Virus record (IMG/VR): IMGVR_UViG_3300045051_000720
Coordinates: 155,465-219,464 of that record
Direction: 5' to 3' (one strand)
DNA length: 64,000 nt
Under the pieces are notes generated by a model, which worked only from the letters and a program-made list of their open reading frames with translations, did no database searches and had not been told where the DNA came from. This document shows, one piece after another, positions 11,775 to 55,409 of this stretch. The translations under genes and the position numbers were made by a program. How positions within the stretch are numbered: the first letter of the stretch is position 1; the number at the start of each line of letters is the position of its first letter.

Positions 11775-12086
11775 ATGACCCAACGCACGACCATCCGCCA
11801 GATGTGGGAATACGGAGCAAACGCCGAAGGGTCATTGGTGCTAGCAAAACCCCTTGAGGGGTGGACCTGTAAAGGTCAATCCGTGTTGGTCGTGCCCTAC
11901 AATCCAACCTGCCGTCTCGCCACGATCAAACGGACGACCAAAACCCTCTGGCCACGCGCCAAGGGCAAGCGCCGTGAGGAGATGGAGGCGCTGGTGATGT
12001 ACGTGCTCGGCACCGCTTTGACCCCATCTCGGCGCCCGCGCTGGATGCCATCAAGCGTGGGGTCAACGAAGCCGGGTTGGTTCTAG
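11775..12086 (+). CDS. hypothetical protein
   Basis: leaderless promoter TTGACG(11740)-17-TACCTT-6-ATG. Confidence 0.6.
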   Translation: MTQRTTIRQMWEYGANAEGSLVLAKPLEGWTCKGQSVLVVPYNPTCRLATIKRTTKTLWPRAKGKRREEMEALVMYVLGTALTPSRRPRWMPSSVGSTKPGWF

Positions 12087-12133
12087 GGACTTGACCCTAT
12101 AGACACCACCGCACGACCTGCTATCCTCCAGCC
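12084..12133 (+). promoter_or_regulatory. palindrome-promoter module (type example)
   Basis: TAGGG-ACTTGA-CCCTA + TAGACA-16-TATCCT-6-ATG. Confidence 0.75.
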
Positions 12134-12312
12134 ATGCTCACCAAATCTGACACCGAACTCTGCACCATCATCCTCAACCGATGGGCGAGTCGCACTCGCC
12201 GTGCGGAGGCCCTGACCACTTTGGTCACCCGCCGCGAGGCGACCTCTTACGAGGCGGGAGTCAGATATGGCCATGCGCGAGGCAGTGCCACGGCGGACGC
12301 ACGGAGGGGACA

Positions 12313-12579
12313 ATGACCCTTATCGATCTGCTCACCCGCGCCGGGAGCGACCTCAAGCACCAACGGCTTGACGAATCGTTCGTGTCCATGCGACAGAGAA
12401 AAACCCATGCTGAGGTTACTTTTTCGACCGAACCGGAGGTTGCGGCGCAACTCGCGCGCAGTATGTTGACTAATCAAGCGGCCGACTACGTGGGCATTGT
12501 CGTGTGGGTGCCGGCGTCGGCCTTCACTCAACACCGCGACGACGATCTCGTGATCAGAGGTCATTCGGCAACGCCTTGA
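12313..12579 (+). CDS. hypothetical protein
   Basis: GAGGGG RBS, ATG 12313. Confidence 0.55.
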   Translation: MTLIDLLTRAGSDLKHQRLDESFVSMRQRKTHAEVTFSTEPEVAAQLARSMLTNQAADYVGIVVWVPASAFTQHRDDDLVIRGHSATP

Positions 12580-12585
12580 ACGAAA

Positions 12586-12894
12586 ATGGCTTACAAATGC
12601 TCAGACCCCAAGTGCGGTAAGGTCCAAGTTGCCTCCACCCGTTGCCTAGCCTGTGGCGCGATCTGCTTGCCCCACGTCCTGCCGTGCTCGCCTGCTGGTG
12701 CCGATTGCGCTTCAACCACGATGCCGATCACTTCACTACCTACAATTTGGGAGGCGTTCTGCGACGCCAGTTACTACGATATGTGGGCCGTGCGCCGCAC
12801 AACCGAGACCGGCTGGGGTGAGTGCTTCCACCTCAACAGCAAGGCTGAGGCCGAAGGGCTGACCAAGCTGCTCAATGACCACAGTGTGCCTTGA
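12586..12894 (+). CDS. Zn-ribbon hypothetical protein
   Basis: CSDPKC..CLAC motifs. Confidence 0.55.
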   Translation: MAYKCSDPKCGKVQVASTRCLACGAICLPHVLPCSPAGADCASTTMPITSLPTIWEAFCDASYYDMWAVRRTTETGWGECFHLNSKAEAEGLTKLLNDHSVP

Positions 12895-13098
12895 GGACGA
12901 AAACATGGACCTCGCTGACTACCTTCGCCGCATCGCCGCCGTTCCGCTGACCTCCGGAACCACGCGCTACGTTCCCGCGTTGTGCCGTCCTTGGCGGCGC
13001 AAACAGTGAATGACATGACCTTCATCGTCATTAGCTGCCTCGCGGCGCTATTCGTTATGCTGTTCGCACACAACGATTGCCGGTAGAACGAACCTGAC

Positions 13099-13290
13099 AT
13101 GAAAAATCCATTCGACGCCAACCTAAGCAACGACGCCCTGCGCGAGATTCGCGCCATACTAGAGCGCGAGATGGCCGAACTCATGCGGGTCACTTCTCTT
13201 TGCTCTTACGCGCCCGCAATCGAAACGGGCCGCGCCAACATCGCCAAGGTTCGTAGCCTTATCGCCGCCATCGACGCCGCCCAGTCCTGA
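13099..13290 (+). CDS. hypothetical protein
   Basis: flanked by GAACGA motifs. Confidence 0.55.
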   Translation: MKNPFDANLSNDALREIRAILEREMAELMRVTSLCSYAPAIETGRANIAKVRSLIAAIDAAQS

Positions 13291-13296
13291 ACGACC

Positions 13297-13960: not shown

Positions 13961-13973
13961 GGCGAACGAAGCT

Positions 13974-16852: not shown

Positions 16853-17062
16853 ATGACTGGCTGGCGCACCTTCCGCTGCGCGTGCGGGCTGGCCTTTGAG
16901 GAGGCCACTCGCGACGCGCTTTCTCCTTCGCTCACTATCTGCCCGCGCTGCAATGAGGAGTGTTTTCCTGATGCTCATCGACTTGACGATCTGGCCACCC
17001 ACATGGGCAACCTGACCATGCCATGGTCGGCGCGGGTGAGGGTTTTGGGGGATTTGCCCTAG
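16853..17062 (+). CDS. Zn-ribbon small protein
   Basis: CAC..CPRC; ATGA overlap with 16671-16856. Confidence 0.5.
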   Translation: MTGWRTFRCACGLAFEEATRDALSPSLTICPRCNEECFPDAHRLDDLATHMGNLTMPWSARVRVLGDLP

Positions 17063-17095
17063 AGACAACGCCATCTGATCTGCTACCTTTTCACC

Positions 17096-17470
17096 ATGTC
17101 CACCCATTTCCCTCAATCCTCCGGTGGGTCCATCTACTTCCCCTGTTCACCCGACCAGTTCGCGGTGTTCAAGCGGGGCGATAGGGTCGTGCGCACAGCG
17201 GTCAGCGTCCCCTCTTCCTTTGAGTGGATAGAGAGCGGTGAGCCGCCGCAGAAGGACAAGGTCTATGTGGTTCGCGACTACCACTACGGCTACGCCGAGA
17301 CCAACGGCGGTCGCCCCCCTGTCTATGGCCAAATCCTCAATCTGGTCGAGTGCGTGTGTCATAGGACCCCGCAAGGACTTGAATACGGCTGGTTTCACGC
17401 GGGTTTTCGTAAGGTGACCGAGGAGGAGATCGCCGCGCGAGTGGCCCAGACACAGGAGGTTTCTTTATGA
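17096..17470 (+). CDS. hypothetical protein
   Basis: behind palindrome-promoter module at 17046-17095. Confidence 0.65.
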   Translation: MSTHFPQSSGGSIYFPCSPDQFAVFKRGDRVVRTAVSVPSSFEWIESGEPPQKDKVYVVRDYHYGYAETNGGRPPVYGQILNLVECVCHRTPQGLEYGWFHAGFRKVTEEEIAARVAQTQEVSL

Positions 17471-17714: not shown

Positions 17715-18095
17715 ATGAACTGGCGCGCCATGGCCAAGGCCCCGAAGGACGGGACCCATATTCTGCTCGCCTACCCCTCGTTCAGCGACAACGGTCAGGT
17801 CTATGTGGGGATCGGGAGGTGGGTGGATTGCCCACCCCAAGCCGCGGTCGAGCGCGAATGCCGTGAGGCTTATGACCAACACCGTCCTGTTGTGCCTGTC
17901 GATCCGGGCAAACCCCACTGGGAGGTCGCCTATGTCGCGGAGCTGGAGCACGGCGGGGCCTATAACGGCCACTCCTACGAAGCGCGCTCGGCAACCATCC
18001 ACCATCCGTTTGGTTGGATGCCGTTGCCCAAGACGCCCAAGCGTATGTGGCGAGCGACCGCGTCGTTGTCCTACCTGTCCTACCTGAGGGATTGA
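17715..18095 (+). CDS. DUF551-like protein
   Basis: W..MAKAPKDGTHILL and C-terminal WMPLPKTP. Confidence 0.65.
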   Translation: MNWRAMAKAPKDGTHILLAYPSFSDNGQVYVGIGRWVDCPPQAAVERECREAYDQHRPVVPVDPGKPHWEVAYVAELEHGGAYNGHSYEARSATIHHPFGWMPLPKTPKRMWRATASLSYLSYLRD

Positions 18096-18134
18096 CCCTA
18101 TTGCGCGCGCCGCGCGGTGTGTTACCATCCGACC

Positions 18135-18680
18135 ATGAAGACCATCACCCTTCATCGCCTCAAGACCATCCTTGAGAACCTGACCCACGCCACGCCCGTG
18201 GGTGTCATCGCTTTGACCACCGCGGACTGCCGCGCCAAGGGGCCAACCGGCCCCAACCCATGGGGCAAGGATGGCGTCAAGAAACTGACTCGGCTTAACG
18301 CTATGATCGGCACGGACCACGAGCTGTCCATCCAGCGCCAACAGGCCCGCGAGGGTCAGGAAGCCGATTTCCTCGCTGCGCCGCGCTCATGGGGCGTTCG
18401 GATCGGACCGGGGTTGGTTGAGCATAGGGGGCAGTACTATTTGCCTCTCCAACTCAGTCCCGTCAACGCGGTGCGTCCATTATACTTGGTCCCCCGAGAA
18501 CGCGGGGCCAAGACCATCCTCACCGCCGTACCCAAGGAAATCGTTGCACCGTGGTTATCACCCGCGCGGGATGAGCGTGTCTATCAGGGGGTAGTCCGAC
18601 CGGTAGTTAGGCGCGATCTAAGGCTTGACAGTATCGTTAGCATCACTCTTGGCGGGGAGAAGTATCGCATTAGATCTTGA
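18135..18680 (+). CDS. conserved phage hypothetical protein upstream of the pentamer array
   Basis: leaderless ATG 18135; NPWG..VKKLTRLNAMIG..QRQQAREG..F..PRSWG..LVEHRGQYYL motifs. Confidence 0.75.
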   Translation: MKTITLHRLKTILENLTHATPVGVIALTTADCRAKGPTGPNPWGKDGVKKLTRLNAMIGTDHELSIQRQQAREGQEADFLAAPRSWGVRIGPGLVEHRGQYYLPLQLSPVNAVRPLYLVPRERGAKTILTAVPKEIVAPWLSPARDERVYQGVVRPVVRRDLRLDSIVSITLGGEKYRIRS

Positions 18681-21484: not shown

Positions 21485-21992
21485 CCCACCCAACAGATCT
21501 CCGCGATACCGTCAGTTCCCGCATCCGCCGCACGGTCGCGGCCAAGGCTTACAACCGCATCCATGCGTTCAACGCGGGCCGCGCCGAACCCCTCACCGAT
21601 GACGAAACCCACTGCTGGGCGGCGGGCTTCATTCAAGGCTACCTGCTGCGCCGCAACGAGCAGGCCAAGAAGAAGACGCGGTGAACCCCGTCCGTCAGCG
21701 GGTCGTTGAGAACCCAACCCTGATCGTGGACACCACCACCGCCGCGATGGTGGCTTGGCTTCGCGCCGCCGGCTTCGTGGATGGCGATCTCAAGGACATC
21801 TCGGACCGCCCACCCGAGGGCGTGTACCTGCGTCGGGGCACCACCTACGTGTTTATCGCGACCTACGAAGGTCGCTTCTGCGAGGCCATCATCGAGCGAC
21901 TAGACCAACCCAAACAGCCCAAGCGGAGGGTGGTTGGTACTGGGACGATTGCGCGATCGATGGACGAGCTGGTGGTGGTCATAGGGTCTTGA
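21481..21992 (+). other. two small coupled hypothetical ORFs (21481-21684, 21681-21992)
   Basis: ATGA/GTGA overlaps. Confidence 0.55.
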
Positions 21993-22033
21993 CCCTACTT
22001 GACAACCGCGTTCAACTCGGGTAGGGTACCACG

Positions 22034-22498
22034 ATGTCATCCTGCACCTGTCAATCCTGCCAAGGAGCTTGTAAGCGCAAACCCGGCTGGTTCAAGCCCG
22101 GTGAGGTTGAAGCCGTGGCCGCGTTCATGGGGTTGACGCTGCCCGAGCTGTTCGCCAAACACTTGGCGGCGGATTGGTGGGAGGATAGCGAACCTACCTT
22201 CGTGCTCTCTCCCGGCATCATCCGCTTTGGTGAGCCCCACGTGGGCACCGAGATGCCCGGCAACCCGCTGGGCCAGTGTGTGTTCTACAAGGATGGGCGC
22301 TGTTCCATCCATAAGGTCAAGCCTTTTGAGTGCCGGGCCTACCATCATGAGCTGACTCACGAACAGGTCAAAACCAACCATCGCGCGGCCTTCGAGGCTT
22401 GGGCCATGCCCGAGCACCAGAAGCAGATCGCGGACCTGTTGGGCCGCGAGCCGGTGGCTGAGTCGTACAGCATCTTTGACTCCTTCATGTGGCGATGA
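22034..22498 (+). CDS. YkgJ-family cysteine-cluster (Fe-S/Zn) protein
   Basis: CTCQSCQGAC..CVFYKDGRCSIHKVKPFECRAY; perfect palindrome-promoter at 21982-22033. Confidence 0.8.
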   Translation: MSSCTCQSCQGACKRKPGWFKPGEVEAVAAFMGLTLPELFAKHLAADWWEDSEPTFVLSPGIIRFGEPHVGTEMPGNPLGQCVFYKDGRCSIHKVKPFECRAYHHELTHEQVKTNHRAAFEAWAMPEHQKQIADLLGREPVAESYSIFDSFMWR

Positions 22499-27341: not shown

Positions 27342-27373
27342 ACATCCCCATCCAACTCGTCTATCCTCCCACC

Positions 27374-28932: not shown

Positions 28933-28981
28933 GGTAAACACCCTGCTTGACGGGCCACCCATCATCGAGTAACCTACCACC

Positions 28982-32400: not shown

Positions 32401-32460
32401 CGAGGGACGGTACTAGGCAAGCCGCTGACGGCTATTTTCTTCTATCCCGCGTTCTCGTAG
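29449..32460 (+). other. run of hypothetical ORFs (29449-29730, 29727-30329, 30326-30679, 30676-30972, 31019-31270, 31431-31946, 32197-32460)
   Basis: + strand tiling, overlaps, leaderless promoters. Confidence 0.6.
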
Positions 32461-37888: not shown

Positions 37889-37935
37889 GGGGTTGTTCCC
37901 ATAGACACCGCGCGCCAACCTGTTACCCTCCCATC

Positions 37936-42623: not shown

Positions 42624-42667
42624 TCCCCCTATTGTGCTTCCCAGCCCCTATGGTATAGTCACCCCCG

Positions 42668-43297: not shown

Positions 43298-43346
43298 GGT
43301 TTCCCCTCACTTGACTCCCTCCCCCTATTGTGGGACACTGCGAGCG

Positions 43347-43730
43347 ATGAACAAACCCAACACACACGCCCCGGCCGCCACCGCGCAGACGATCAACACG
43401 CAAACGCCCGGCCCGCTCACCGTCGCAGCACTCTCTGGCAAGATCACCGCGGGCGGCATGACCATTGCGGCGAGCTACGATCTACGGCATGACAGCCACG
43501 GCAAGGAGGAGCATGCGAACCGGCGTTTGCTCGCCGCCAGTTACACCGCCTTTGACCGCGCCGGGCGCGAGCTTGGGATCGATGCGGTCGATCTGGCGGA
43601 ACGGATCGATCTCGCCGCGCTGATTCGTGCGGCCCGTGAACTGCTCGACGCCGCCGAGCGCGACACGTTCAAGAGTCACGGACGCGGGCAGAGTGAGATC
43701 GAAGCGATGCGCCGAGCATTGGCGATCTAG
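43347..43730 (+). CDS. hypothetical protein
   Basis: leaderless ATG 43347. Confidence 0.6.
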   Translation: MNKPNTHAPAATAQTINTQTPGPLTVAALSGKITAGGMTIAASYDLRHDSHGKEEHANRRLLAASYTAFDRAGRELGIDAVDLAERIDLAALIRAARELLDAAERDTFKSHGRGQSEIEAMRRALAI

Positions 43731-43779
43731 GGCCAACCCCCCATAGACACCTGCCCCGCTTTGGTCTAACCTTGGGACG

Positions 43780-44373
43780 ATGAAAACGATTGCGCTTCCC
43801 GTTACCGTCGCCGCTATGCGCGGCGAGAATCACCCGGCCGATTTTAAGCTTGCCTTGGCAGGCGGTTTGACTGCTCACATCCGAACCGAACGCGACGACG
43901 ATCACGAAGCCCCTTGGGAGGACGGCGACGGGCGCGGGATTGTGTCGAATTGGACAACCCGCGACAAGCGGCCCGGCGAGCGCGTTTTGTCTTCGGACGG
44001 ACGCAGCAAACGGTTTTACGATTACGCGGCGACCATTGAGATCGCCAAGCGTGACGGCTGGGACGCCCCGCCATACAAGACGGGAACGAAGGACCAACAG
44101 GCCGCGCGAGCCGTTGAGGCCGATTTCGAGTTTTGCCGCAGTTGGTGCGCCGATGAATGGGAGTATATTGGCGTGATCGTCACCCTTACGGACGGCACCG
44201 GGCGGAAGGTAGGCAAAGATTCGATTTGGGGGATCGAATCGTGCGAGAATCCCGGGCATGGGTTTTATTGGCACGAACAAGCGGCCGAAATGGTCAACGC
44301 CCTTGCCGAAGCGCACGCCGCGGAGAGTGCGGAACGTGCCGAGTGGGAAGCCCGGGACACGGTGACGATCTAG
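43780..44373 (+). CDS. conserved hypothetical protein
   Basis: DEWEYIGVIVTL..DSIWGIES motif. Confidence 0.7.
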   Translation: MKTIALPVTVAAMRGENHPADFKLALAGGLTAHIRTERDDDHEAPWEDGDGRGIVSNWTTRDKRPGERVLSSDGRSKRFYDYAATIEIAKRDGWDAPPYKTGTKDQQAARAVEADFEFCRSWCADEWEYIGVIVTLTDGTGRKVGKDSIWGIESCENPGHGFYWHEQAAEMVNALAEAHAAESAERAEWEARDTVTI

Positions 44374-44423
44374 GGTGTAGTCCCTACTAGACAAACCCCC
44401 GATCCTCTGTCACACTGGCGACG

Positions 44424-45095
44424 ATGAACACAACCGCCCCCGCCAACCTCGCAACCCTCGCCCCGGCCATTTGCCGCGCGCTGGGGTTTAACAGCCTCCA
44501 CCATTGGACGGCTTCTGATTTCCAGACCTACCCGCGCAGCGACGGTGAATGCACCCTAACCCGCGCCGACGGTCTTGCGCTTTACGTGGTCGCCGGGGGT
44601 TACGGCAAGGCCGGACGCATCACGATCACGCACTCGCGCCCGCGCGGCGTCAAGGGCGAATGGGTCGAGCTTTGGGGCGAAGGCGCCGCCAAGATCAACA
44701 GCCCCGAGATCACCGTTGCGGCCACGGCTGACGCCGAGCGGATCGCCAAGGAGATCGCGCGCCGGTTGCTCCCCGATGCGGAGTGCGTGCAAGGCTTGGC
44801 CATGGCGCGGATTGACGCCGATCGGGCCTACCGGGACAGCCGGCTTGCCCTCCTCCGCGCGATCTGCGAAGCGGCGGGCGAGCCCGTACCCGGTGAACAC
44901 CGCCACAACCGGGAGCAGGTTTACAGCGTTGACATTTACGCCAGCGACGCCGCGCGGAAAGAATACAGCCCGATCGCCCGCGCCGAGGTGCGCGGGGGTT
45001 ATGCCGAGATCAAAGTTGACGCCAAGCCCGGACAGGCGGAAGCCCTGATCGCGTTCCTCCGCTCCCCCGCCTACCTCAACGCGGGCACCGTTTAA
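44424..45095 (+). CDS. hypothetical protein
   Basis: 223-aa ORF behind perfect palindrome-promoter 44371-44423. Confidence 0.7.
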   Translation: MNTTAPANLATLAPAICRALGFNSLHHWTASDFQTYPRSDGECTLTRADGLALYVVAGGYGKAGRITITHSRPRGVKGEWVELWGEGAAKINSPEITVAATADAERIAKEIARRLLPDAECVQGLAMARIDADRAYRDSRLALLRAICEAAGEPVPGEHRHNREQVYSVDIYASDAARKEYSPIARAEVRGGYAEIKVDAKPGQAEALIAFLRSPAYLNAGTV

Positions 45096-45112: not shown

Positions 45113-48100
45113 ATGACTCACCCGACCATTACCACGCAAGGCGCCTTGCGCGCCGCGTTTTGGGAGACGTACTCCGATTCAATCGCCCGCCACTACCGGC
45201 GCGGCAAACGTCAAAACGATTACCCCGCCGATGTGCGCATGGCTTGGGTTGACTACGTTGACGCCTGCCAGCGCAACGGGGCGATCTCGGAAAAGCTGGC
45301 GCAGCGTGCGACCCTCTAACGGGTTGCGCTTGTTTCCCCGCTTGACCCGCGCCCCCTCTTTGCCTAGTCTCCCTTTAGGGTGAGAGATCACCCGCTCACG
45401 CAAACGGTTGTGTGTTCATCCTCGGGCCGGTGGGCTAACGCTCGCCGGCCCTTGGTGTTTTTGGGGGTTTGTCCTCAGTTGACGGACGGGCGGCAATGGG
45501 TTAGGGTTGAGGGGATGAATACGATCCCCGCCAAGGTAACAAACCCTCGCGAAGTGCGCTATCTTGCCCCGCAAGGGAGCGAGCTTGCCCCCTACGTCCC
45601 CGTTGGCGACTGGCAACCCTTCCCGGCTTGGCTTCACCTTGCCGATCATATCGCGCACAACCTGCCGCGATCGTGGCGTTGTGAAGGTGAGGCGCGGTTT
45701 TATGTCGCGCCAAGCGGTGCAATCGGCTTTTGCGAAGTCCGCTAGGGTCTTCCCCCCTCTAGACAACACCCCCCGCGATCTGGCAGGATAGCCCCCGATG
45801 AACACAACCGCCGCCCGTTTCACTGTGGAGCACAAAGGCCGCGCACACGGCTTTGCCACTCTCCCCGCCGCCAAGGCTTGCGCCGACAAGGTATTTGCGC
45901 AAACTGGCGTGGCCCTTGGCATCACGCCCGCTTTCCTCATTCGCGACAACGCCGGGCGCGGCTATCTCGCGGCCAACGCTTCAACCTCCTTTGACCTACC
46001 GCGCAATTGGACAACCGCCCGCCGGGCGCGTCTGTTCGCGACGTTTGACGAGGCGAGCGCGCACGCGCAAGCCTTTTTCCGGGCCGGGTTTGTGAGGATT
46101 GAGGCCGCGCAATGAGCCGATCCGCAGAGCTTGCGGAGTTAGAACGGGCCTTTGCCGCTGGCAACGTATCCGCGGAGGTCGCCCAAAAGCGCGCCGCGCA
46201 ACTACTTGGCGCCTTTCGCAATGACTGGCGCACGCGCGGCCGGTGCGTGTTTCTTTGGAATGCCGCCCGCGCCAAGGTGGGAGACAAACAGAAAGCCGCG
46301 CGCAAGCGTGGCACGGGCAAGGGGCGCTAAGGTGTTTACCTTACTAGACAACACCCCCGCGATCCTATAGGGTTGACCCGATGAACACCCCTCGTTACAC
46401 CGTTTTAGACACCTATCCGGCCGATCTCCGCAACGAGACGCCGCCGCGCCGTGAAGAGATCGCAGAGATTCAGGATCGCGAAGCGGGCGATCTGTTGTGC
46501 TACGCCAACCCGGCACACGCCGCGCGGATTTGTCAAGCGGTCAATGGCTACGCCGCCGCCCTCAACGTGCTGCGCGAAGTGCTCGACGATTGCACCGATC
46601 ACACGGGGATCGGGGTGGGCGGCGGAACGCTTGCCCGGGTCCGCGCTGTGCTCGCGGACAACGAGGGAGTAACCCCGGACCCGATCGCCTCCCTCCTTTG
46701 GCGTCTCACCTGTCACGTTGAGGGGTTAGCCGCTTACACTCTCCCCGCGACTGCCGATCTGTGCAATGAAATCCGCCGCACTCTCGGCAAACCGGAGATC
46801 AAGCCGTGAACCTCCTAGCCCCCACCGATCCGCGCTACCTTCGCCGCCTTGTGCGCGAGTGCAACGCCCTGCCGGATGGCTTCTATGCCGATCACGGCAC
46901 CTTGCGCGCCCGATTCAACCGCACCCGGTTTACAACCGCCGGCCACTTCACAAGCGGCGGAGCGTTCCAAGCGCGCCCCATAGGGGATCGCCGTTGGCTC
47001 ACCCTTGATCCCGCACAGATCGCGAGCATAGGCGACGCCTACGGGCGCAACGTGTGCGCGAGTCGTACCCCATGATCGATCCCCTTTCCGCCTTTGCTAA
47101 CGCGATGACGCTCGCCCGGGTTGAGGAATTGACCCGCCAGCGCGACGCCTTACAGCGCGAGATCGCCGCGATTGAAGCACACGATCCCGCGACGCTTGCC
47201 CGGTTTCACCTTTACACCGGGGAGCAAATCACCCGGCATGGACTCGACTGCGCGGCGCGCGAACGGGCGCGGTTCACCCCGGCGGAACAGGCCGCCGCCA
47301 ACGCGCGAGCCCTCGCCGCGAGTCAAGCGGAGTTTGACGCATACAAAGCGCGACGCTAGGCGATCAACCCTAGAGACAAGCGCGCCGCTATGGGTTAGGC
47401 TTGATCTGATGAAAACGCCCCTTTGCTACGTCTTGACCCAAACGCGGGATCGTGAATATGCCCACTTGCGGCTGACAATCCGCCACCTTGGCGATACCCG
47501 GTTCGGTGACTCGCCGACCGCTGAAATCCGGTTTCAAACCGATGCGGAGAATCACAAGAGGACCGGGGGCGGCTTTTGGTACGGTTACCGGATCGAGATC
47601 AACGCCAAGAGCGGCGCGGAAGCCGCGCGCCTTGCCAGCGCGATCACCCGGGTTGAAAAGACGATTGAAGAGCGCAAGTCGGAAGACTACGCCGCGCGCC
47701 AGATCACCCCGGCAAACCTGTTATGGGCTCTGGATCAAGCCAAGATCGGCCGCGCCGTGTTCGATGGCCGGACGGACCTTTACACCTTGATCGGCAAGCT
47801 CCCCGATCCCGCGCTCCGGCAATGGGGCAACCGATCCGTGAGTGTGTTGGCGGAAGACGCGGAACGCGCGCGCCGCTTGCTCGCGGTCAAAACCGCGGAA
47901 TACAGCCTCAGCGCACTTGAAGAGTGGATCGCCGCTGGCAAGCCCGTCACTGAGGGGCGCGACGTTGCGCCGGTAGTCGAACCGCTTGACAAGCTTCTCG
48001 CCGATCCCTTCGCGCCGATTGCCACCCCTCAAGCCCCCGCTAGCATATAGGGGATCAACCCTATAGACGGCGGACCCGTTATGCTATAGGCTACCGGTGA

Positions 48101-48777
48101 TGAACGCAACCCTATCCCGTAACGCCCGGCGCGCTTTGCTTGTGCGCCGTTTTCGTTCGCTTCGCCTCGGCGGAGCTGCCGCCCTTTCCCTCTTGACCGT
48201 CCGCGCCATCGATGCGGAAAGCTCCCGTGAGGCCGCCCGAATTGCGGCGAGTATCGCCAAGGGGCGCGAGCGGGATCGATCGGTACAGGATGACACCCCG
48301 ATCGCCGAGATCGGCGAGTCTCACGGGTTGAGTCTGCGCGGATATACGCTCACACACGCCGACCGCGCCACCCTCGCCGCGAGTTTGGGCCGGGCGCCCC
48401 GCGCGTTGGTCGTCAAATCCGCGCCGGTTGTCAATGATGAGCCGATCGATCCCGGTTTCATCCCGGCCCCGGTTGAGCCCTACGCCCCGATCATCACGCA
48501 CGATCCCGCGATCGATGCGCAAGCCGCGATCGAAGCCGCCGCGGAGGTTGCGGAGATCGAAGCTCGTGACGCGCGCGACGCTGACGCGCTCTCTTTCGTC
48601 TCCGATCTCGAAAGCGGGATCGTTGACTATACGCCGGCCATCCCGACGATCGCGACGGTCGCCCCGGTTGACAACAGCGAACACGCGCAACTCGCGCGCC
48701 TTGTACTGGCAAACGTTGCCATTGCCCGGGAAGCAGCGCACGTCGCGCGGCGCAATGGTCGCACCGTCGCCGCCTAG
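45113..48777 (+). other. run of hypothetical ORFs (45113-45319, 45515-45745, 45798-46115, 46112-46330, 46381-46809, 46806-47075, 47072-47359, 47409-48050, 48100-48777)
   Basis: leaderless promoters, GATC-rich codon usage. Confidence 0.6.
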
Positions 48778-49325: not shown

Positions 49326-51724
49326 ATATCCCGCCACCCCCCGCACCCTTAACCCGGATCACTTCTACGGCTCGACGCCGATCCCGCACGGGCGCACGAT
49401 TCCCCATGACAGGCAATCGCTTGCGGCGCAAGGGTTTACCTTTGCGATCATGGCACTTGCCTTTGTCGCTTTCGTCATGCTTGCCGCTTGGCTCTAGGGT
49501 TGATCCCTCAATCGTGCAAACGGGCTTGACACTGTACCGATCGCGGCTAGGTTCGCCCCGATGAATGCAACCCGTTTCAATCTCACCTTTGAAGTGATCA
49601 CCGAACGATCCGCCGAGCAAGGCGACTTTGCCCGGCATGGATTTTTGCCCCGATCGGGCGATATCCCGCGTCGCACTTATATGCCGAAAAACCCGCACGC
49701 CTTTACGCTGCGCGAAGCGATCGAAATCATGGCGCGACACAATAGCGGGTTTGCCCGCTGCGAGGCGGACAGTTGCCCCGTCAGCCGTCCGCGTTGGCTG
49801 ACGATCCGCGGGGAGATCGATGATTATCCCGGCATGCCGGACGCCCTAGGCGTGTCGCTGCATATCCCGGAGACGGTTAGCACGGCGAGCGCGCGGCGGA
49901 TCGCGCGTTTGCTTGGGTGTTATGGGTTGCCCCGGTTCCGCTCTCACGTCGCGGAAATCGCCTTTGCCATCGGAGCCGATGCCATGCGCGGGCTTGGCGC
50001 GAAAGGGTTTGACAATGACGGGATCGCTGGTCAAACCTCCCCCCGATGAAAACAAACACCCTTGCACCGTTCCGCCAGTGGGGGAACGCTCACCGGCACG
50101 CCGCGCCGTTTGTCCTGCCTTATGCCGTCAACGTTGGCCGGTGAAACCCAACGCGCGCAAAACGGCGCAACCGTTTTTGGCAAACACGCTTCCCCGTCAA
50201 AATCCGTCAGCTCGACAACGCATTCGCGTTTGCCCGCTTACGCGGAAAGGTTAGAGCGGGCTTGGCAAATTATCATCCGACACGGGTATTCATCCGGGGG
50301 CGGTTCCCATAGGGGGATCGCCCCTTGTGCTTTTTGCTATTGACAGGGGGAAGGATCGGACCACACTTCGCCCCGATGAATACTGAAACCATAAGCGCAA
50401 GCGCGCTTGCCATCGTCGCCGGGATCGATTGGGATCGCGGCTATTTCACGCGGGAAGAGTGCACGGCGATCGAAACTGGATTCCGCAACCCGTTCCGCGT
50501 TGAGCGTCTGACGCGCGATCTTGAAGCCGTTCGCCGCGTTGAGAATATCTCAACGGCGGATTTCAGCGACACGGCGCGCGAATGCACGCGGCTGTTTGGC
50601 AACGGTCAAACGCTCGACAAGCCTCTAGAGGCAATGGCGATTGCGCTTGACCACGAAATTTGCGAAGAAAACAAGCGCGCGAACATTGTGCGCGCTTTCG
50701 GATTCAAACGCGGACCCGATGAGGCTTGGCGCTTGTGGATCGTGTTGACGCGGGAAGGATCGAAGCTTTTCCCCACGGAAAAGGCTTGCGCAAACCTTTG
50801 GGCGGGATGGGGTTTTGATGCCGCCGCGTCGCCGCAATCGGAGTATTCTCCGACCGGCCGAATGTTTCAGGGTGAATTGCACGTTCGCCGCGCAAGCAAC
50901 AGCTGCGCGATCCTGACGCAATCCGGCGCGCGAGACGTTTAGGCTTGATCGGATCGGATCAAATCGTCAACCCTGTCACCGATGAAAACGGAAATCCGGA
51001 TCACCCCTAATCGCGATCGGGGCTATGATGCCACGATCTACAGCGTGCGCGCCGTGCGCCTGTCCGCGTTTATGCGCAACCTTTGCGAGCGTACCGGATC
51101 GGATGGGAAGGAGCGCGAACCGATGCACACTGTAAACGCCCCAAGCGAAGCGAAAGCGCGCGAAATGGCGCAAGCTTGGATTGATGCGCAACCCAAGCGC
51201 ACGCGCAAGCCTCGCGCGCTTTCGGAAAGCGAATGCGAGACGCGCGAAGCGATCGCTAACGAAAAGCGCGCGCACGGTTGACCGTCTCTCCCACCCTTCA
51301 CCCCTAGGTTGCCAAAGCCTAGGGGTTTTCTATTTGACAGACCCTCCGGATCGCGTTCTATTGCCAACGATGAAACCCTCGAAACTCTTATCCGATCCGC
51401 GTCTCGCCGCGTCGCGCGACGCTTTCACCCTCGCCGCTAAATACTCGCGCCTATGGGATCAAACCGTTGCGCGCGGGATCAAACGCTTTGGCGAACGTCC
51501 GCAAGGTGGCCACGTCTCCGGAATCTATTCCGAACACTTCCCGCAACGCTGGCAAACCCGGTTGCGCAACCTTGCGCGAGCCGTCACCGAACACTCGGAT
51601 CGCGCCTATGCCAGCAAGCCCGCGCGCGTGCGTCTGGCAACCTTGCGCCAATTGCGCGCAGCAATCCACGCGCGAGACGGATCGGGCTTTTACGGTTAAT
51701 CTGCTACCCTCCGCGCAAGCGTTC

Positions 51725-51749: not shown

Positions 51750-52767
51750 CGTGCCTACTCGCGCAGATTGCATGATGCGGCTGATTTGCATTAGACCTAG
51801 GGGATCAACCCTACCGCACTAGGCTTGCAATCGCGCGCGAGGGTTATACTTTCCCCCCTGTGAATACCTCTAACCCGTCAGATCAAAACGTGGCGCAAGC
51901 CATTGTGTTCTCTCCCGAAAACGAATCAAAAGCAATTGCTTGGCTCCGCACGCGCGGAGGAATTGCGGTTTGGTCTAATAAAGACCTAGGCTCGCCGGAC
52001 CTAGGCTCGCAATCCTTCACCCCGGCATTGACTGAAGACGGCAAGCCCTATCCCTCGCCAAATTGGCGTTGCGGAACGTCCGGACCCGATCGGATCGTCA
52101 CCGATGTCACGCAAGTGATCGTTCAGACCTACCGGGAAGTTGCGCGCGTTAAGATTCGCCGCGGTCTGCCCTATCTGGGATGCGTGCACCGTGCGGATCG
52201 CGATCGTCTCGACAAAGCTTTAGCGGCGGCCGGACCGGCGGCCGGATGGAACGCGGATTATTCCCGTATGGCATACGGATCGCCTTGGTTTGAGGCAGTG
52301 ATCAGCGTACCGGCGGAAACGCGCGCGCCTAACCTTTCGCTCTAATCCCATGAAACTGTCTTCCCCATTTTTCATCTCCGCGCGTTTGGCTCCGGCGGTC
52401 CGCATTGCGGACGCGGTTTTGTCCTTTGATCGCGGTCAATTCGTGCTGGATTTGCCAGACGGATCGGAGCACCGGATCACTGACTTTCACTTTCCGGCCG
52501 GACGCGTGCACGGTGCAACGGATGAAAGCGAATTGCAAGACGCGTTTGGCGCGATCCTGTCTTTCCTGTCAGCTTGTGCCGAGTCTCGCGCATACGCTCG
52601 GCGCCGCGGACGTGATGAGAGTGAAGGTGAAAACAGTGATCTCTTTCCCGCGAACGTCGGCGAGTGGGCGGAAAGTGTATCGGATGAACTTGGCATGCTG
52701 GCATGCGAACTAGAGGAAACCCGCGGATTAATCGCGCCGGAATAGGCTTTCCCTCCCTTCCCACCTT

Positions 52768-52798
52768 AAACCCGCGTGCGTCAATGCTGCGGGTTTTT
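52768..52798 (+). terminator. intrinsic terminator
   Basis: AAACCCGC..GCGGGTTT followed by Ts. Confidence 0.65.
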
Positions 52799-53457
52799 AC
52801 TTGGCTAGGCGATTGCCAGTTGCGAATGAGTTGCGAGTAGGAAAACGCGAAAACGCTGTTGACAGTAGCCAAAAACTCCATTTGCTAGGCGTTGCATGAA
52901 ATCTTACCTTCACACTTGGATCGGAGACGAGCCGCGCGGCTCTTTGCCTTGCACGTTGGCGGAATTGCTGGCATTTGGCGTTCCAATGTCCGCAATCGAA
53001 TCGGATATGCGCGGCGAGTTGAAAACGATTGGACCGTGGCAAATCCCGGTTTCCTACCGTGCGCTAGCAATGTCGACGGTTTACACGGACGAAACGCGCG
53101 CAATGTGGTCCGCGCAGACTGATTCGAAGACCGTGCATGGGATGCGGACAATGACGCAATGTCATCAGGAAGGATATCAACTAGAGGGTAGGGTAACAGT
53201 CGACGGGAAATCCCACCGTGCGTTTACGTCTTCGCAACTCTTCAGCGTTCGCATGCCAGACGGCACGATCAAACTTGTCAAGATGGCCACGATTCATGTC
53301 TGCATCGATGACAAAGAGCAAACCGCGCAGATCACCGCGTTGCGCGCGGCCGGTCTGATTCCCTCTCACGTTGCCAAGCAAAGAGAGCCAATAACTCGCG
53401 CGGAGACTCTTTGCGCGTTGCTTGGCTACCGTTAAAGGGGTTTCTCCTTCCCTTTCT

Positions 53458-53486
53458 AGACCTACTCGCAAGGGTAGGTCTTTTTT
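53458..53486 (+). terminator. intrinsic terminator
   Basis: AGACCTAC-8-GTAGGTCT followed by T-run. Confidence 0.8.
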
Positions 53487-53841
53487 GCGTCTAATGCACA
53501 GGAAAGAGGCCTAGGGAGGGAATGAGGGAAGGTTTCCCCCAATAGGAGGAAAGACAGTAAAAGGAAAGAACCCCAAGGGAGGGTAGCAAAGCAGAGTTTG
53601 GCTAGGGTGGGAGGGTAGTCCGTCCCTCCCTCAATAACCCCTAACTAGTTAGGCACCTAACTATCTCACTTCCCCTCCCTTCCCATAGGTTCAGCCTATG
53701 GTTTCCCCCCTAGGGTGTTCCACGTGGAACAATTAGGTGATCAACCCTACTACTCTAGGCTTGCTCTCTACCCTCTAACCCTCCCTAGTGGTGGCAAGGC
53801 GCAAACCGGGCGCTGAATCCAAAACCTAGTCTAGTCCAACG

Positions 53842-54135
53842 ATGAAAACTCCCTCCGTCTACTGTGTTCTTAGTCTGAATCAGCTAGAGGCAATGATCAC
53901 CCAAGCCCGCCAGCAAATGGCCATTTCTCGGGATCAAGGTCTCCGGCCGGCCGATTCCGTTAATGGCCAAGCGTGCGCAATCTTCTATGGCGATCGGCAC
54001 GAAGACCGGACGGCAGGCATGGATCAAATCTCCTTCACTATGCTGCGCGACTCCGCTTCTAGTGAACCGGTCTTGCTATTCTCCGCCGCATCTCGCGTGC
54101 CGTCGCTTCCCATCCCCGCGCGCGTTTCCCTCTAA
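53842..54135 (+). CDS. hypothetical protein
   Basis: only credible ORF in the CTAG-rich region. Confidence 0.5.
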   Translation: MKTPSVYCVLSLNQLEAMITQARQQMAISRDQGLRPADSVNGQACAIFYGDRHEDRTAGMDQISFTMLRDSASSEPVLLFSAASRVPSLPIPARVSL

Positions 54136-54242
54136 CCCTCAAGTGTTTACGTCTATGCCTTCCCTCCCTTCCGCTCTTTGCGCCAAGTGTCCGGACGTTG
54201 TTTCGTTCGTTCGCCTTTAAGCCTCTCCCTCCCTACCCTTCG

Positions 54243-54271
54243 CCCTACCCTTACCCGGGTAGGGTTTTTTT
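54243..54271 (+). terminator. intrinsic terminator
   Basis: CCCTACCC-6-GGGTAGGG followed by 7 T. Confidence 0.8.
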
Positions 54272-55409
54272 GTGCCTACACTTCACACACTAGGCGCGCC
54301 TAGGTGTATACCAAGCGCACGCACGCATGCCACATTGCGCCAACGGTCACAGCGTCTCTTAGGAGTATGAGTCTGTCCCTACCTAGTAACCAAGCTCTAG
54401 CATGCGAGCGATAGCAGTGCGGCTCTTTAGTTAGCCGACTAGTCACCCCTTCACTCGCCTAGTTTTGCGCCACTCGCGCGCGACGCTAGGCGCAACTGCG
54501 TCCGGGTTTTGCTCATAGCCTCAGACCGTACCAAACCGGGCTTGCCAACCCTCGCCGCTATAGCCTACGCGCACGAGGCTGTAGAATCAAAAATCCGACT
54601 GTCAGATTGATCTGTGCCTCTAGAGGTAAACCCCCCTTGCTGCGGTCTAGTGGCTGCCGCGCATCAAATCGCCTTAAATCGCACGCAATGGCCATTGCTG
54701 CACAAATCGATGCGACGCAACGAATTGAGTTGTTCTCCCTATTGACAACGCGCCCATCCCCCAGATCAAAATGAGGGATCATCCCGATTGACATAGGGTG
54801 AGCACCCTAACGCGCCTAGGGGGTATTTATTCGAAAAATGGGGGGAAGACCCTACCCCGTCGCGGCGGCGGGGGGCTTACATCCTGCCGCTCAACCCCAT
54901 TTTTCGCAGGCTGCGCAAGGCAGATTTATTCATTTCCTACGTCTGTCTCCCCCTATTCGTTCAGACCACCCTTCAAAAAATCCGCGAGGCAATTTTTCAA
55001 ATTACTGCCACCTTGTGGCCATAGACCCCCTCAACCCACCATTCCTCCGTACTGCCGCCGGTCGCGCTGGCTTCGCGACATAATCATACCTTCCCTCCGC
55101 TTTTTCCCGAGCGACCCGTCGCGCGATCCTGTAGTCCAACCACTGGTCGAATGTCCAACCCTCTGGGCATGAACGCACAACGCGCGATTTGGCCCGGCGA
55201 GGCGACCACGCCGCGATCAGAGCGTTCACTCCCACCCGTACGGCCGACCGACGTGCGATTGATGAGAAAAAAGAGACCAGCGACCTACCCGAGAAAAATG
55301 ATCGGCCAAGCGCGAGACGCATGGCACCATCGTGGCGACGTTCCCTACACCTGTCAAGCACCAAAAACACGGCCCGCCCGCGCGGCGCGCGCCTCGTGTA
55401 TATCACCGT

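What the first reader, a model, noticed from the sequence alone, without database searches (positions are those of the whole stretch)
12084..54809. Covarying 5-6-5 palindrome abutting the -35 box of more than 25 promoters
Seen: TAGGG-N6-CCCTA lies 0-1 nt upstream of the -35 hexamer in perfect copies at 12084, 21982, 23797, 38335, 39184, 44371 and 48048. Further perfect copies at 51798 and 54794 sit in other positions. Compensated variants are TGAGG/CCTCA (34385), TGGGG/CCCCA (38851) and TAAGG/CCTTA (46328), with many near-perfect copies. The left arm often doubles as the upstream stop codon. Known: CRP/FNR sites have the same 5-6-5 geometry and activate from about -41.5. Inference: an undescribed phage-wide regulon operator at about -42 to -44, or a short recombination or RNA-hairpin element that makes genes cassette-like.
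Basis: partly seen in the sequence, partly recalled or inferred. Interest (0 to 1): 0.7.

Follow-up and report, generated by a model that had tools for sequence, protein, structure and literature searches.

The report
Palindrome-tagged leaderless promoter cassettes, jumbo phage
A 16-bp palindrome (TAGGG-N6-CCCTA) sits at one fixed place just upstream of 33 promoters for leaderless genes in the ORFan-rich arm of an uncultured 219-kb soil phage. It is most likely a shared regulator-binding site, and it resembles the promoter/stem-loop cassettes (PeSLs) known from T4-like phages, so it is a new variant of a known kind.

Summary
The motif is real. There are 9 perfect copies against 0.03 expected, and 20 copies with at most one mismatch against 0.67 expected. 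I count 33 palindrome-plus-promoter modules in window 12-48 kb. Each 47-55-nt unit reads: upstream stop codon (often the first 3 nt of the left arm), palindrome, -35 (TAGACA/TTGACA) 0-2 nt later, 16-17 nt, (TGc)TAnnnT, 6-8 nt, ATG. The mRNAs are therefore predicted to be leaderless.

The palindrome centre lies 31.5±1 nt upstream of the -10, about -43.5. The motif is not phage-wide. It marks one promoter class in one 43-kb ORFan-rich region: 17/22 promoters there carry it, against 0/22 TTGACA promoters in the replication-gene region.

"Covarying" is not supported. Arms pair no better within sites than between sites, G·T and A·C mismatches are equally common, and TGAGG/CCCTA is usually uncompensated.

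Two related metagenomic phages keep the same arms at the same distance from the -10. Their loops diverge, and in one the -35 decays.

The best reading is a sequence-specific operator for a dimeric regulator at a class-II position, embedded in PeSL-like gene cassettes. No binding protein was identified and no RNA data exist.

The parts
12084..12136 (+). module: TAGGGacttgaCCCTA + TAGACA-16-TATCCT-6-ATG; the left-arm TAG is the stop of the upstream ORF
17046..17098 (+). module: TGGGGgatttgCCCTA + GAGACA-16-TACCTT-6-ATG
18085..18137 (+). module: TGAGGgattgaCCCTA + TTGCGC..TACCAT-6-ATG (uncompensated TGA arm)
21982..22036 (+). module: TAGGGtcttgaCCCTA c TTGACA-17-TAGGGT-6-ATG
23797..23850 (+). module: TAGGGacaacaCCCTA + TAGACA-17-TACCGT-6-ATG; the upstream ORF stops at the TAG of TAGACA
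25592..25645 (+). module: TGAGGgacacaCCCTA + TGGTGT..TATACT-7-GTG
27323..27376 (+). module: TGAGGtctctcCCCTA + TAGACA-17-TATCCT-6-ATG
28930..28984 (+). module: TAGGGtaaacaCCCTG c TTGACG-17-TAACCT-6-ATG
30965..31021 (+). module: TGAGGtagattCCCTA + TTGCGC..TACCAT-10-ATG
32458..32512 (+). module: TAGGGtaatccCCCCG c TAGACA-17-TATCCT-6-ATG; drives the 295-aa gene whose ortholog in relative 1 also has a module
34385..34437 (+). module: TGAGGtcaaccCCTCA + TTGTCC-16-TATCAT-6-ATG (compensated variant)
34720..34774 (+). module: TGAGGgattctCCCTA c TGGACG-17-TATCCT-6-ATG
35957..36010 (+). module: TGGGGtgatccCCCCG g TTGACA-16-TAAGGT-6-ATG
37101..37155 (+). module: T TGGGGtcttccCCTCA c TAGACA-16-TATCCT-6-ATG
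37616..37669 (+). module: TAGGGtaaacaCCCGG c TAGACG-16-TATCCT-6-ATG
37886..37938 (+). module: TAGGGggttgtTCCCA + TAGACA-16-TACCCT-6-ATG
38335..38387 (+). module: TAGGGgcgacgCCCTA + TAGACA-16-TAGGAT-6-ATG
38851..38904 (+). module: TGGGGgtttctCCCCA c TAGACA-16-TATCCT-6-ATG (compensated variant)
39184..39236 (+). module: TAGGGtcttttCCCTA + TTCCCA-16-TACCAT-6-ATG (weak -35)
39700..39752 (+). module: TGAGGacaactCCCTA + TGGTCA-17-TACCCT-5-ATG
40227..40280 (+). module: TAGGGtaaaccCCCGA c TAGACA-16-TAAACC-6-ATG
40972..41025 (+). module: TAGGGagaat(c)CCCTG a TGGACA-16-TAGACT-7-ATG (loop of 5 or 6)
41713..41768 (+). module: TAGGGtgatctCCCGA c TAGACA-16-TAGACT-8-ATG
42297..42350 (+). degenerate module: TAGTGtgatccCCCTC..TTGACC..cTGCTATCCT-7-ATG
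42616..42670 (+). module: TGGGGtgatccCCCTA + TTGTGC-16-TATAGT-8-ATG
43295..43349 (+). module with a 5-nt loop: TAGGGtttccCCTCA c TTGACT..ATG
43728..43782 (+). module: TAGGGccaaccCCCCA + TAGACA-17-TAACCT-7-ATG
44371..44426 (+). module: TAGGGtgtagtCCCTA c TAGACA..TCACAC(poor -10)..ATG
45462..45517 (+). module: TGGGGgtttgtCCTCA g TTGACG-17-TAGGGT-7-ATG; a canonical U-tract terminator (45424-45451) lies directly upstream of it
45743..45800 (+). module: TAGGGtcttccCCCCT c TAGACA..CAGGAT..ATG
46328..46383 (+). module: TAAGGtgtttaCCTTA c TAGACA-17-TAGGGT-7-ATG (compensated variant; the stop is TAA)
47357..47411 (+). module: TAGGCgatcaaCCCTA + GAGACA-17-TAGGCT-7-ATG
48048..48102 (+). module: TAGGGgatcaaCCCTA + TAGACG-17-TAGGCT-4/7-GTG/ATG
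49495..49510 (.). displaced copy TAGGGttgatCCCTC, about 15 nt upstream of the TTGACA-16-TAGGTT promoter of the 162-aa gene at 49561 (77% identical in relative 1)
51798..51813 (.). perfect copy 11 nt (one helical turn) upstream of TTGCAA-16-TACTTT-7-GTG, the promoter of the gene at 51860
53734..53749 (.). orphan copy TAGGTgatcaaCCCTA in a non-coding stretch; it shares the ...CTAGGCTTGC tail with the 51798 copy
54737..54854 (.). conserved non-coding cluster: CCCTA-TTGACA, CCCGA-TTGACA-TAGGGtgagcaCCCTA (54794-54809) and TGGGGggaagaCCCTA (54839-54854). The cluster, including the GGAAGA-type loop of the last copy, is conserved in both related phages

Best explanation
The palindrome is a double-stranded DNA operator. 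A dimeric, sequence-specific transcription factor, probably encoded by this phage clade and not identified here, binds T(A/G)(G/A)GG-N6-CCCTA centred about 43.5 bp upstream of the start point. This directly abuts the -35, the position used by class-II activators such as lambda cI at PRM or CRP/FNR at -41.5. Through contact with RNA polymerase the factor switches one whole promoter class, at least 33 promoters, on or off together.

These promoters drive leaderless mRNAs for short operons of ORFan genes whose internal genes are coupled by ATGA overlaps. Because the genome is packed, the distal half-site is built on the stop codon of the preceding gene. The result is a 47-55-nt stop/operator/promoter/start unit.

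I think activation is more likely than repression, because the element persists at fixed geometry in a relative whose -35 hexamers have decayed.

As a side effect, the roughly 45 nt of shared sequence at each cassette border can act as a recombination linker, as in PeSL cassettes.

Shown: the motif, its geometry, its class specificity, its conservation and the lack of structural covariation. Inferred: leaderless start points, protein binding, the direction of regulation and recombination.
For: 1. Enrichment and class specificity.
- 9 perfect copies against 0.03 expected.
- 17/22 promoters in window 12-49.6 kb carry the palindrome with at most 2 of 10 mismatches, against 0/22 TTGACA promoters in the replication-gene region (Fisher p = 8e-8).
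- 19/23 copies lie in one 43-kb region.

2. Rigid geometry. The arm end lies 22-24 nt from the -10 start in 46/50 modules.

3. Sequence is conserved, not structure.
- 91.6% of cells pair against 90.3% when arms are shuffled among sites (31/500 shuffles reach it).
- Mean hairpin energy is -6.56 kcal/mol against -6.41±0.23 when left and right halves are swapped among sites (p = 0.24). Sense and antisense strands do not differ (p = 0.41).
- G·T mismatches (18) are about as common as A·C mismatches (16), so there is no RNA-strand signature.
- Left arm TGAGG is paired with an unchanged CCCTA in most cases.
- The centre is W-rich, with TT (14) and AA (11) in either orientation.

4. Relative 1 (61% aa identity in the 295-aa protein; only 15/67 genes shared) has 23 modules with the same arms and the same spacing. 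At orthologous promoters the loops differ completely.

5. Relative 2 (50% GC; sigma protein 63% identical) keeps TGAGG/TAGGG-N6-CCCTA 22-23 nt from GCTATCTT-type -10 boxes. Its -35 position reads TTCTCT/TTCCAT, about 3/6 mismatches. Two of its modules have essentially no hairpin (-1.2 kcal/mol).

6. It is not a terminator. There is no U-tract, and only 1 palindrome module between 36 and 55.5 kb (42616) meets the terminator scan. Canonical U-tract terminators exist in the same region, and one sits immediately upstream of a module.

7. A cluster of three copies in a non-coding stretch is conserved in all three phages, an operator-array-like arrangement.
Against: - No binding protein was identified. 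There is no CRP-type HTH and no Mor or Ogr family hit above cut-off. The conserved proteins of the region have no informative family. The HTH_7 protein at 9819-10481 is only a candidate by position.
- No RNA data could be listed, so start points, timing and leaderless status are inferred from geometry.
- In this phage the -35 (TAGACA) and the TG-extended -10 are good enough to work without an activator. Palindrome quality does not anticorrelate with -35 quality (rho = -0.12, p = 0.42).
- A weak excess of pairing exists at the outer arm positions (p = 0.02-0.05).
- The only perfect copy outside the region overlaps the start point of the phage sigma-factor operon, but it is not conserved in three relatives.
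- Half of the modules use the left arm as a stop codon, so part of the left-arm conservation may have a non-regulatory cause.
Confidence: 0.52

Rival explanations
1. PeSL-type RNA or DNA stem-loop. The palindrome folds in the upstream transcript, or in single-stranded DNA, and acts as a terminator, attenuator or insulator between cassettes. It may also act as a 3'-end stabiliser. Its closeness to the -35 would then be only genome compaction.
For: - The composition is the same as PeSLs: a G-run/C-run stem-loop directly before a sigma70-type promoter, between small ORFans (PMC2839356, PMC4122927).
- It lies at operon ends and overlaps the stop codon in 20/40 cases.
- Hairpin energy is well below that of shuffles: -6.6 against -2.8 kcal/mol.
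- Loop length varies from 5 to 7, and several copies have extra inner pairs.
- There is a slight excess of pairing at the outer positions.
Against: - No U-tract, and only one palindrome module meets the terminator scan. Real U-tract terminators are used nearby, and one lies directly upstream of a module.
- No covariation beyond the consensus.
- A·C mismatches are as common as G·U.
- The consensus in relative 2 (TGAGG/CCCTA) is itself mismatched, and two copies there do not fold.
- The element is absent from operon ends elsewhere in the genome.
- The spacing to the -10 is rigid.
Confidence: 0.2
2. No dimeric factor is involved. CCCTA(T) is an upstream promoter element read directly by RNA polymerase, through alpha-CTD, host sigma region 4, or one of the two phage-encoded sigma70-family proteins. 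The left arm is mainly 'stop codon + GG', so the dyad symmetry is largely incidental.
For: - The right arm is slightly better conserved than the left at positions 14-15.
- The left arm follows the type of stop codon (TAG, TGA, TAA) while the right arm mostly stays CCCTA.
- The phage encodes sigma70-family proteins at genome 15442-16179 and about 64951-65622.
- The -35 differs between the three phages while CCCTAT is constant.
Against: - GG at exactly 6 nt from CC is nearly invariant even where the stop codon lies elsewhere.
- Perfect palindromes also occur away from gene ends and away from -35 boxes, at 51798, 53734 and in the 54.7-54.9 kb cluster.
- The -10 (GCTAt..T) is shared with the other promoter class, which argues for the host sigma.
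Confidence: 0.13
3. The primary role is as a recombination linker or site. The conserved modules exist because they mediate cassette gain, loss and exchange, either by homologous recombination between modules (PeSL mini-circle model) or by integron-attC-like site-specific recombination.
For: - Only 15 of 67 genes of relative 1 in this region have a homolog in the window, while flanking order is kept.
- Modules are the dominant repeat families of the region.
- 5 of 8 collinear orthologs start at a module in both genomes.
Against: - No tyrosine or serine recombinase is encoded in the genome.
- At least one gene replacement lies inside an operon, not at a module (46381/46806 against relative 1).
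- No joints or variants were seen in the available contigs.
- Recombination does not explain the rigid distance to the -10.
Confidence: 0.1

Closest known systems
PeSL (promoter-early stem-loop) cassettes of T4-like phages (Arbiol et al. 2010, PMC2839356; Comeau et al. 2014, PMC4122927)
   Same: Both are short repeated intergenic units made of a G-run/loop/C-run inverted repeat placed just upstream of a sigma70-type -35/-10 promoter. Both are densely packed between small ORFan genes in a hyperplastic genome region, and gene content around them differs strongly between relatives.
   Different: - Here the inverted repeat abuts the -35 by 0-2 nt, where PeSLs have an AT-rich tract.
- There is no U-rich tail and no Shine-Dalgarno sequence; the ATG follows the -10 by 6-8 nt (leaderless).
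- The left arm is often the upstream stop codon.
- The arm sequence, not just pairing, is conserved across three diverged phages.
- The phage is not T4-like: it has a J-type tail tip, a DnaE-type polymerase and 59% GC.
- Terminator activity and mini-circles, shown for PeSLs, are untested here.
Class-II activator sites: CRP (TGTGA-N6-TCACA) and FNR at -41.5, lambda cI OR2 at PRM (about -42), Mu Mor at Pm (about -43.5). Positions are from my own knowledge of the literature.
   Same: A dyad-symmetric site of about 16 bp (5-6-5 like CRP) at a fixed position touching the -35, centred near -43.5. It persists where the -35 is poor (relative 2).
   Different: The sequence is different. No CRP/FNR, Mor or Ogr homolog was found in the phage and no binder is known. 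In this phage the -35 is near consensus, so dependence on an activator is unproven.
Multi-copy operator-like repeats in actinophages: the Cluster O 17-bp palindrome TGTTCGG-N3-CCGAACA (>30 copies, PMC4351075) and the L5/Cluster A stoperators (the latter from my own knowledge)
   Same: Thirty or more copies of one short conserved site lie in small intergenic gaps of a phage. As in Cluster O, the centre is T- or A-rich and occurs in both orientations.
   Different: Those sites are spread over the genome and are not locked to a promoter at a fixed distance. Stoperators are asymmetric and act by blocking elongation.

Membership tests
PeSL cassettes | G-rich/C-rich inverted repeat immediately upstream of a sigma70-like -35/-10 promoter, repeated in many intergenic gaps | tested here: met
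   33 modules in the window, 23 in relative 1 and 8-9 in relative 2
PeSL cassettes | Concentrated in a hyperplastic, ORFan-rich region whose gene content differs between relatives | tested here: met
   19/23 copies lie in window 12-55 kb. About 100 small ORFs have almost no family hits. Only 15/67 genes are shared with relative 1.
PeSL cassettes | AT-rich tract between stem-loop and -35, and a Shine-Dalgarno sequence before the start codon | tested here: not met
   The arm ends 0-2 nt before the -35, and the ATG lies 6-8 nt after the -10 with no room for an SD.
PeSL cassettes | The stem-loop is an effective transcription terminator | tested here: inconclusive
   By sequence there is no U-tract, and only one palindrome module meets the terminator scan, while canonical terminators occur nearby. 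No functional assay or RNA data are available.
PeSL cassettes | Recombination between cassettes produces indels and mini-circles | not testable with these tools
   Only distant relatives were found. The contigs laid on the region showed no joints, and population variants of relative 1 were identical.
PeSL cassettes | The host phage is a T4-like myovirus | tested here: not met
   The phage has a lambda-J-type central tail fibre (phrog_31, E = 7e-149) and a DnaE-like polymerase, and no near relative in the phage collection.
Class-II activator site (CRP/FNR-, cI-, Mor-like) | Dyad-symmetric site at a fixed position abutting or overlapping the -35, centre about -41.5 to -43.5 | tested here: met
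   The centre lies 30.5-32.5 nt upstream of the -10 start in 46/50 modules.
Class-II activator site (CRP/FNR-, cI-, Mor-like) | Dependent promoters have a weak -35 | tested here: inconclusive
   Relative 2: yes, TTCTCT-type hexamers. This phage: no, mean 1.0 mismatch to T[TA]GACA, and no anticorrelation with palindrome quality.
Class-II activator site (CRP/FNR-, cI-, Mor-like) | A cognate dimeric DNA-binding protein | tested here: not met
   PF13545 gave no hit. PF08765 scored 12 bits, below cut-off. PF04606 gave no hit. Only generic HTH proteins were found, at window 9819-10481 and genome about 120.8 kb.
Class-II activator site (CRP/FNR-, cI-, Mor-like) | CRP or FNR consensus sequence | tested here: not met
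   The arms are TAGGG/CCCTA, not TGTGA/TCACA or TTGAT/ATCAA.
Intrinsic (rho-independent) terminator | Stable GC-rich hairpin followed by a U-tract | tested here: not met
   Mean energy is -6.6 kcal/mol and the hairpin is followed by TAGACA or TTG.
Structured RNA element kept by compensatory change | Significant covariation of paired positions; G·U tolerated, A·C not | tested here: not met
Integron attC-type recombination site | A cognate site-specific recombinase; cassettes without their own promoter | tested here: not met
   No PF00589 or PF00239 hit in the genome, and every cassette has its own promoter.

The most novel reading that the evidence does not exclude
A clade of uncultured jumbo siphovirus-like phages uses a dedicated, still unknown dimeric factor to drive more than 30 leaderless promoters. 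The factor's operator is fused to the preceding gene's stop codon. This gives a standard 47-55-nt 'stop-operator-promoter-start' connector with no untranslated RNA, which lets ORFan cassettes be plugged in, removed and co-regulated. Functionally it would be a regulator-dependent, leaderless counterpart of T4 PeSLs that arose independently.
Probability: 0.3. Interest if true: 0.7.

Novelty: new variant of a known kind. Interest (0 to 1): 0.55.

Why it matters
If the operator reading is right, one factor controls the whole accessory-gene arm of a jumbo phage. That gives a simple handle on temporal control in a phage lineage known only from metagenomes.

The connector is about the most compact transcription-translation unit one can build: the stop codon lies inside the operator, the operator touches the -35, and the start codon is the first base of the mRNA. 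It shows that PeSL-like cassette architecture is not a T4 peculiarity but recurs in an unrelated, GC-rich, leaderless setting.

It also gives a concrete test system for telling protein operators from stem-loops in repeated phage intergenic motifs. Practically, the module is a ready search key for annotating promoters and true start codons in this clade.

Tried and rejected
- Near relatives in the phage collection: none by megablast. Only distant protein hits.
- Motif scans of IMG/VR with TAGGG-N6-CCCTATAGACA and TTGAGG-N6-CCCTATTC gave only single, chance-level matches.
- TnpB as a clue to the host: one distant hit only.
- IMG/VR and metagenome relatives of the 295-aa protein are 29-44% identical, span 29-64% GC, mostly use Shine-Dalgarno starts and lack the module.
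- Sequencing runs: one DNA run (rhizosphere metagenome) and no RNA run listed. Laying its contigs on 37-43 kb gave only short unrelated pieces, with no joints and no variants.
- Supposed population variants of relative 1 turned out to be identical DNA.
- The genome search could not reach the relative's record or draw relatives for a virus record.
- Protein atlas searches for the two best-conserved proteins of the region gave nothing usable.
- The perfect palindrome over the start point of the phage sigma operon (genome 14898) looked like an autoregulatory operator. It is absent at the same promoter in three relatives, so I give it little weight.
- 'Weak -35 in relative 1': the difference from this phage is not significant (p = 0.17).
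- I did not run a protein-DNA complex prediction, because no binder is claimed and the tool gives no verdict for DNA.

Full report
**Setting.** The window is the last 64 kb (155465-219464) of a single 219,464-bp contig with 59% GC. It is a virus record rated 96% complete, and a rhizosphere metagenome run holds the stretch and may be its source. The genome encodes a lambda-J-type central tail fibre, a large terminase, a DnaE-like polymerase, a ribonucleotide reductase, helicases, a DNA methyltransferase and two sigma70-family proteins. The phage collection holds no near relative. The J protein's best hits are phages of Proteobacteria. The host is unknown.

**The observation.**
- TAGGG-N6-CCCTA occurs 9 times perfectly in the window, against 0.03 expected.
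- With at most one mismatch it occurs 20 times, against 0.67 expected.
- It is the commonest 5-6-5 palindrome of the genome, and only one perfect copy lies in the other 155 kb.
- 19 of 23 copies with at most 1 mismatch lie in window 12-55 kb.

**Anatomy.** Aligning the copies shows a composite unit:
- the stop codon of the upstream gene;
- the palindrome;
- 0-2 nt later a -35 hexamer (TAGACA or TTGACA);
- a 16-17-nt C-rich spacer that often ends in cTGC;
- a TAnnnT -10;
- 6-8 nt, then ATG.

No Shine-Dalgarno sequence can fit, so these are predicted leaderless mRNAs. A promoter-plus-start scan finds 49 such sites on the + strand of the genome, 6 on the - strand and 2-7 in shuffles. Within operons, genes overlap by ATGA, and the gap from stop to next ATG at a module is a near-constant 44-50 nt. 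I count 33 modules in the window. In 20 of 40 modules with an adjacent upstream gene end (window and relative 1 pooled), the stop codon is the first three bases of the left arm. In others it is the TAG of TAGACA or a TGA in the loop.

**Two promoter classes.** Promoters in genome 78-167 kb, in front of replication and nucleotide-metabolism genes, read TTGACA-N17-TAnnnT-6-ATG with a conserved t(c/t)AAC in the spacer. They have no upstream palindrome. In window 12-49.6 kb, 17 of 22 promoters carry the palindrome with at most 2 of 10 mismatches, against 0 of 22 in the other class (p = 8e-8). The palindrome is therefore a class mark, not a phage-wide feature and not a general end-of-operon signal.

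**Geometry.** The right arm ends 22-24 nt before the -10 hexamer in 46 of 50 modules. If transcription starts 6-8 nt after the -10, the dyad centre is at about -43.5. This is the place occupied by class-II activators (my knowledge of CRP/FNR, lambda cI at PRM and Mu Mor).

**Structure or sequence?** I tested the covariation claim on 50 modules (27 from the window, 23 from relative 1). They were chosen only by a GG-N6-CC core plus a downstream -10 and start.
- Outer-arm pairing is barely above the level obtained when right arms are dealt out among sites: 109 against 102.7±3.4 Watson-Crick pairs, p = 0.05.
- The formal count gives 91.6% paired against 90.3±0.7% (31/500 shuffles reach it), with 7 double-sided changes against 4.7 expected (72/500).
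- Hairpin energy (-6.56 kcal/mol) is far below that of shuffled 24-mers (-2.8). It is no better than when left and right halves are swapped among sites (-6.41±0.23, p = 0.24). It is also the same on the antisense strand (p = 0.41).
- G·T (18) and A·C (16) mismatches are equally frequent.
- Left arms reading TGAGG (stop TGA) mostly keep CCCTA opposite.
- The centre is W-rich, with TT or AA in either orientation and few TA/AT.

Together these results say that a palindromic sequence is conserved, not a base-paired structure.

**Not a terminator.** The palindromes have no U-tract, and only one palindrome module between 36 and 55.5 kb (42616) meets a lenient terminator pattern. The same stretch has textbook hairpin-plus-U-run terminators at 45424, 50296, 51300, 51725, 53458 and 54242. 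The one at 45424-45451 stands directly in front of the module at 45462.

**Relatives.** The 295-aa protein at 32510-33397 has a 61%-identical homolog on NCBI MAG contigs.
- In 30.8 kb of that phage (relative 1, 60% GC), only 15 of 67 genes have a homolog in the window.
- Relative 1 nevertheless has 23 modules with the same arms and spacing. Its palindromes are better conserved than here: 0.6 against 1.6 mismatches, p = 0.002.
- At orthologous promoters (32510/10001, 39234/12999, 42668/19252, 48100/22481) the arms persist while the loops are unrelated.
- Through the phage sigma protein I reached a more distant phage (relative 2, 50% GC, sigma 63% identical).
- The end of its ORFan region carries 8-9 modules reading (T)TGAGG or TAGGG-N6-CCCTA, followed by TTCTCT/TTCCAT/TTCTAT, then 16-17 nt and GCTATCTT-type -10 boxes 6-7 nt before ATG.
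- The distance from arm to -10 is again 22-23 nt. The -35 is essentially gone, although the same phage has a perfect TTGACA at its sigma operon.
- Its consensus left arm is mismatched to the right arm, and two copies have no stable hairpin.
- A non-coding cluster of three copies near window 54.74-54.85 kb is conserved in all three phages, including the loop of the last copy.
- Distant homologs of the 295-aa protein in other metagenomic phages mostly use Shine-Dalgarno starts and lack the module. IMG/VR motif scans gave only chance hits.

**Interpretation.** Five findings point the same way:
- rigid helical position;
- class specificity;
- conservation of arm sequence over saturating divergence;
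- persistence where both the hairpin and the -35 decay;
- lack of any RNA-strand signature.

Together they favour a dsDNA operator for a dimeric factor acting at a class-II position. I put this at about 0.5. Activation seems more likely than repression because of relative 2. In this phage, however, the core promoters look self-sufficient, so the direction is open.

I could not name the factor:
- no CRP-type, Mor or Ogr domain was found;
- the conserved proteins of the region are ORFans;
- an HTH_7 protein at 9819-10481, conserved in relative 1 at the head of the region, is only a positional candidate.

The one perfect copy outside the region overlaps the start point of the zinc-ribbon/sigma operon (genome 14898). 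It is not conserved in relatives.

**Comparison with the known.** The closest described thing is the PeSL cassette of T4-like phages. PeSLs are GGGG...CCCC stem-loops just upstream of strong sigma70 early promoters. They are dense in hyperplastic ORFan regions, have been shown to terminate transcription, and recombine into mini-circles (PMC2839356, PMC4122927). The present element shares the composition, the setting and the gene flux around it. It differs in the following ways:
- it abuts the -35;
- it lacks the AT/U-rich tract and the SD;
- it serves leaderless genes;
- it embeds the stop codon;
- it is conserved in sequence;
- it occurs in an unrelated phage type.

It therefore works partly like a PeSL as a cassette connector. 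By my tests it is not a terminator-type stem-loop, and it fails several PeSL features. Cluster O mycobacteriophages offer a second parallel: more than 30 copies of a 17-bp palindrome with a TTT/AAA centre in both orientations and unknown function (PMC4351075). No site-specific recombinase is encoded, which argues against an integron-like mechanism.

**Verdict.** The feature is real and strongly non-random. The operator reading is the best supported, and the 'covarying' and 'phage-wide' claims are not. It is a new variant of a known kind, of moderate interest.

Noticed in passing
genome 78-167 kb (outside the window) and window 10485, 11052, 11740: A second promoter class covers about 22 promoters: TTGACA-N17-TAnnnT-6-ATG, also leaderless. 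It has a strongly conserved t(c/t)(c/t)AAC at spacer positions 7-12, often giving TTGAC-N7-GTCAA dyad symmetry. It has no upstream palindrome and sits in front of replication and nucleotide-metabolism genes.
   Followed up: partly
window 12375-16322 and 19229-19356, + strand: The motif (N)GAACGAA clusters between stop and start codons of a run of small genes that lacks palindrome modules. About 20 of the 60 window matches fall in roughly 4 kb, all on the + strand. It may be a non-SD translation signal or an RNA-binding signal.
   Followed up: partly
window 18700-19105: A non-coding 565-nt gap is filled with 10-bp-periodic G-rich repeats (GGCAGGGCTG-like; three short arrays and three 76-nt copies). 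This looks like a protein-binding array or an origin.
   Followed up: partly
window 53435-55485: A stretch of about 2 kb has no convincing gene, lower GC, several canonical terminators and CCCTCCCTTCCC-type repeats. It also holds a stretch conserved in two relatives that contains three palindrome copies, a 6-codon mini-ORF (ATGAGG...TGA) ending in a TTGACA, and a conserved CCCGTCGCG...GGGGG hairpin. It may be a control region, an origin or a small RNA.
   Followed up: partly
L001 14870-16179 (genome coordinates): There is an operon of a zinc-ribbon protein (173 aa) and a sigma70-family protein (245 aa, Sigma70_r2). Its TTGACA-17-TAAGAT promoter is overlapped at the start point by a perfect TAGGGtaaagcCCCTA. 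The operon is conserved in at least 15 metagenomic relatives, but the palindrome there is not. A second sigma-like gene (r2 + r4) lies at genome about 64951-65622 (-).
   Followed up: yes
palindrome loops, e.g. window 35957, 41713, 42616, 47357, 48048, 51798, 53734; L025 3468, 7542, 9639, 16284: GATC occurs in the 6-nt centre far more often than its genome frequency predicts: 6/50 in the strict set, more with the orphan copies. The loop types TAAACA/TGTTTA and GATCAA/TTGATC occur in both orientations and recur in all three phages.
   Followed up: partly
window 2876-4645 (+): A 589-aa ORF carries Cas12f1-like TNB and OrfB_IS605 signatures, i.e. a TnpB-like protein inside the phage.
   Followed up: partly
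window 59803-63549: Three genes with clear families: PhoH-like ATPase (59803-60705), GIY-YIG/NUMOD3 homing-endonuclease-like gene (60730-61437), and a 660-aa right-handed beta-helix tail-spike-like gene on the - strand (61567-63549).
   Followed up: partly
window 9819-10481 (+): A 220-aa protein with a resolvase-type HTH (HTH_7, E = 1e-8) but no recombinase domain. Unlike its neighbours it has an SD-led start. It is conserved (46%) at the head of the ORFan region in relative 1.
   Followed up: partly
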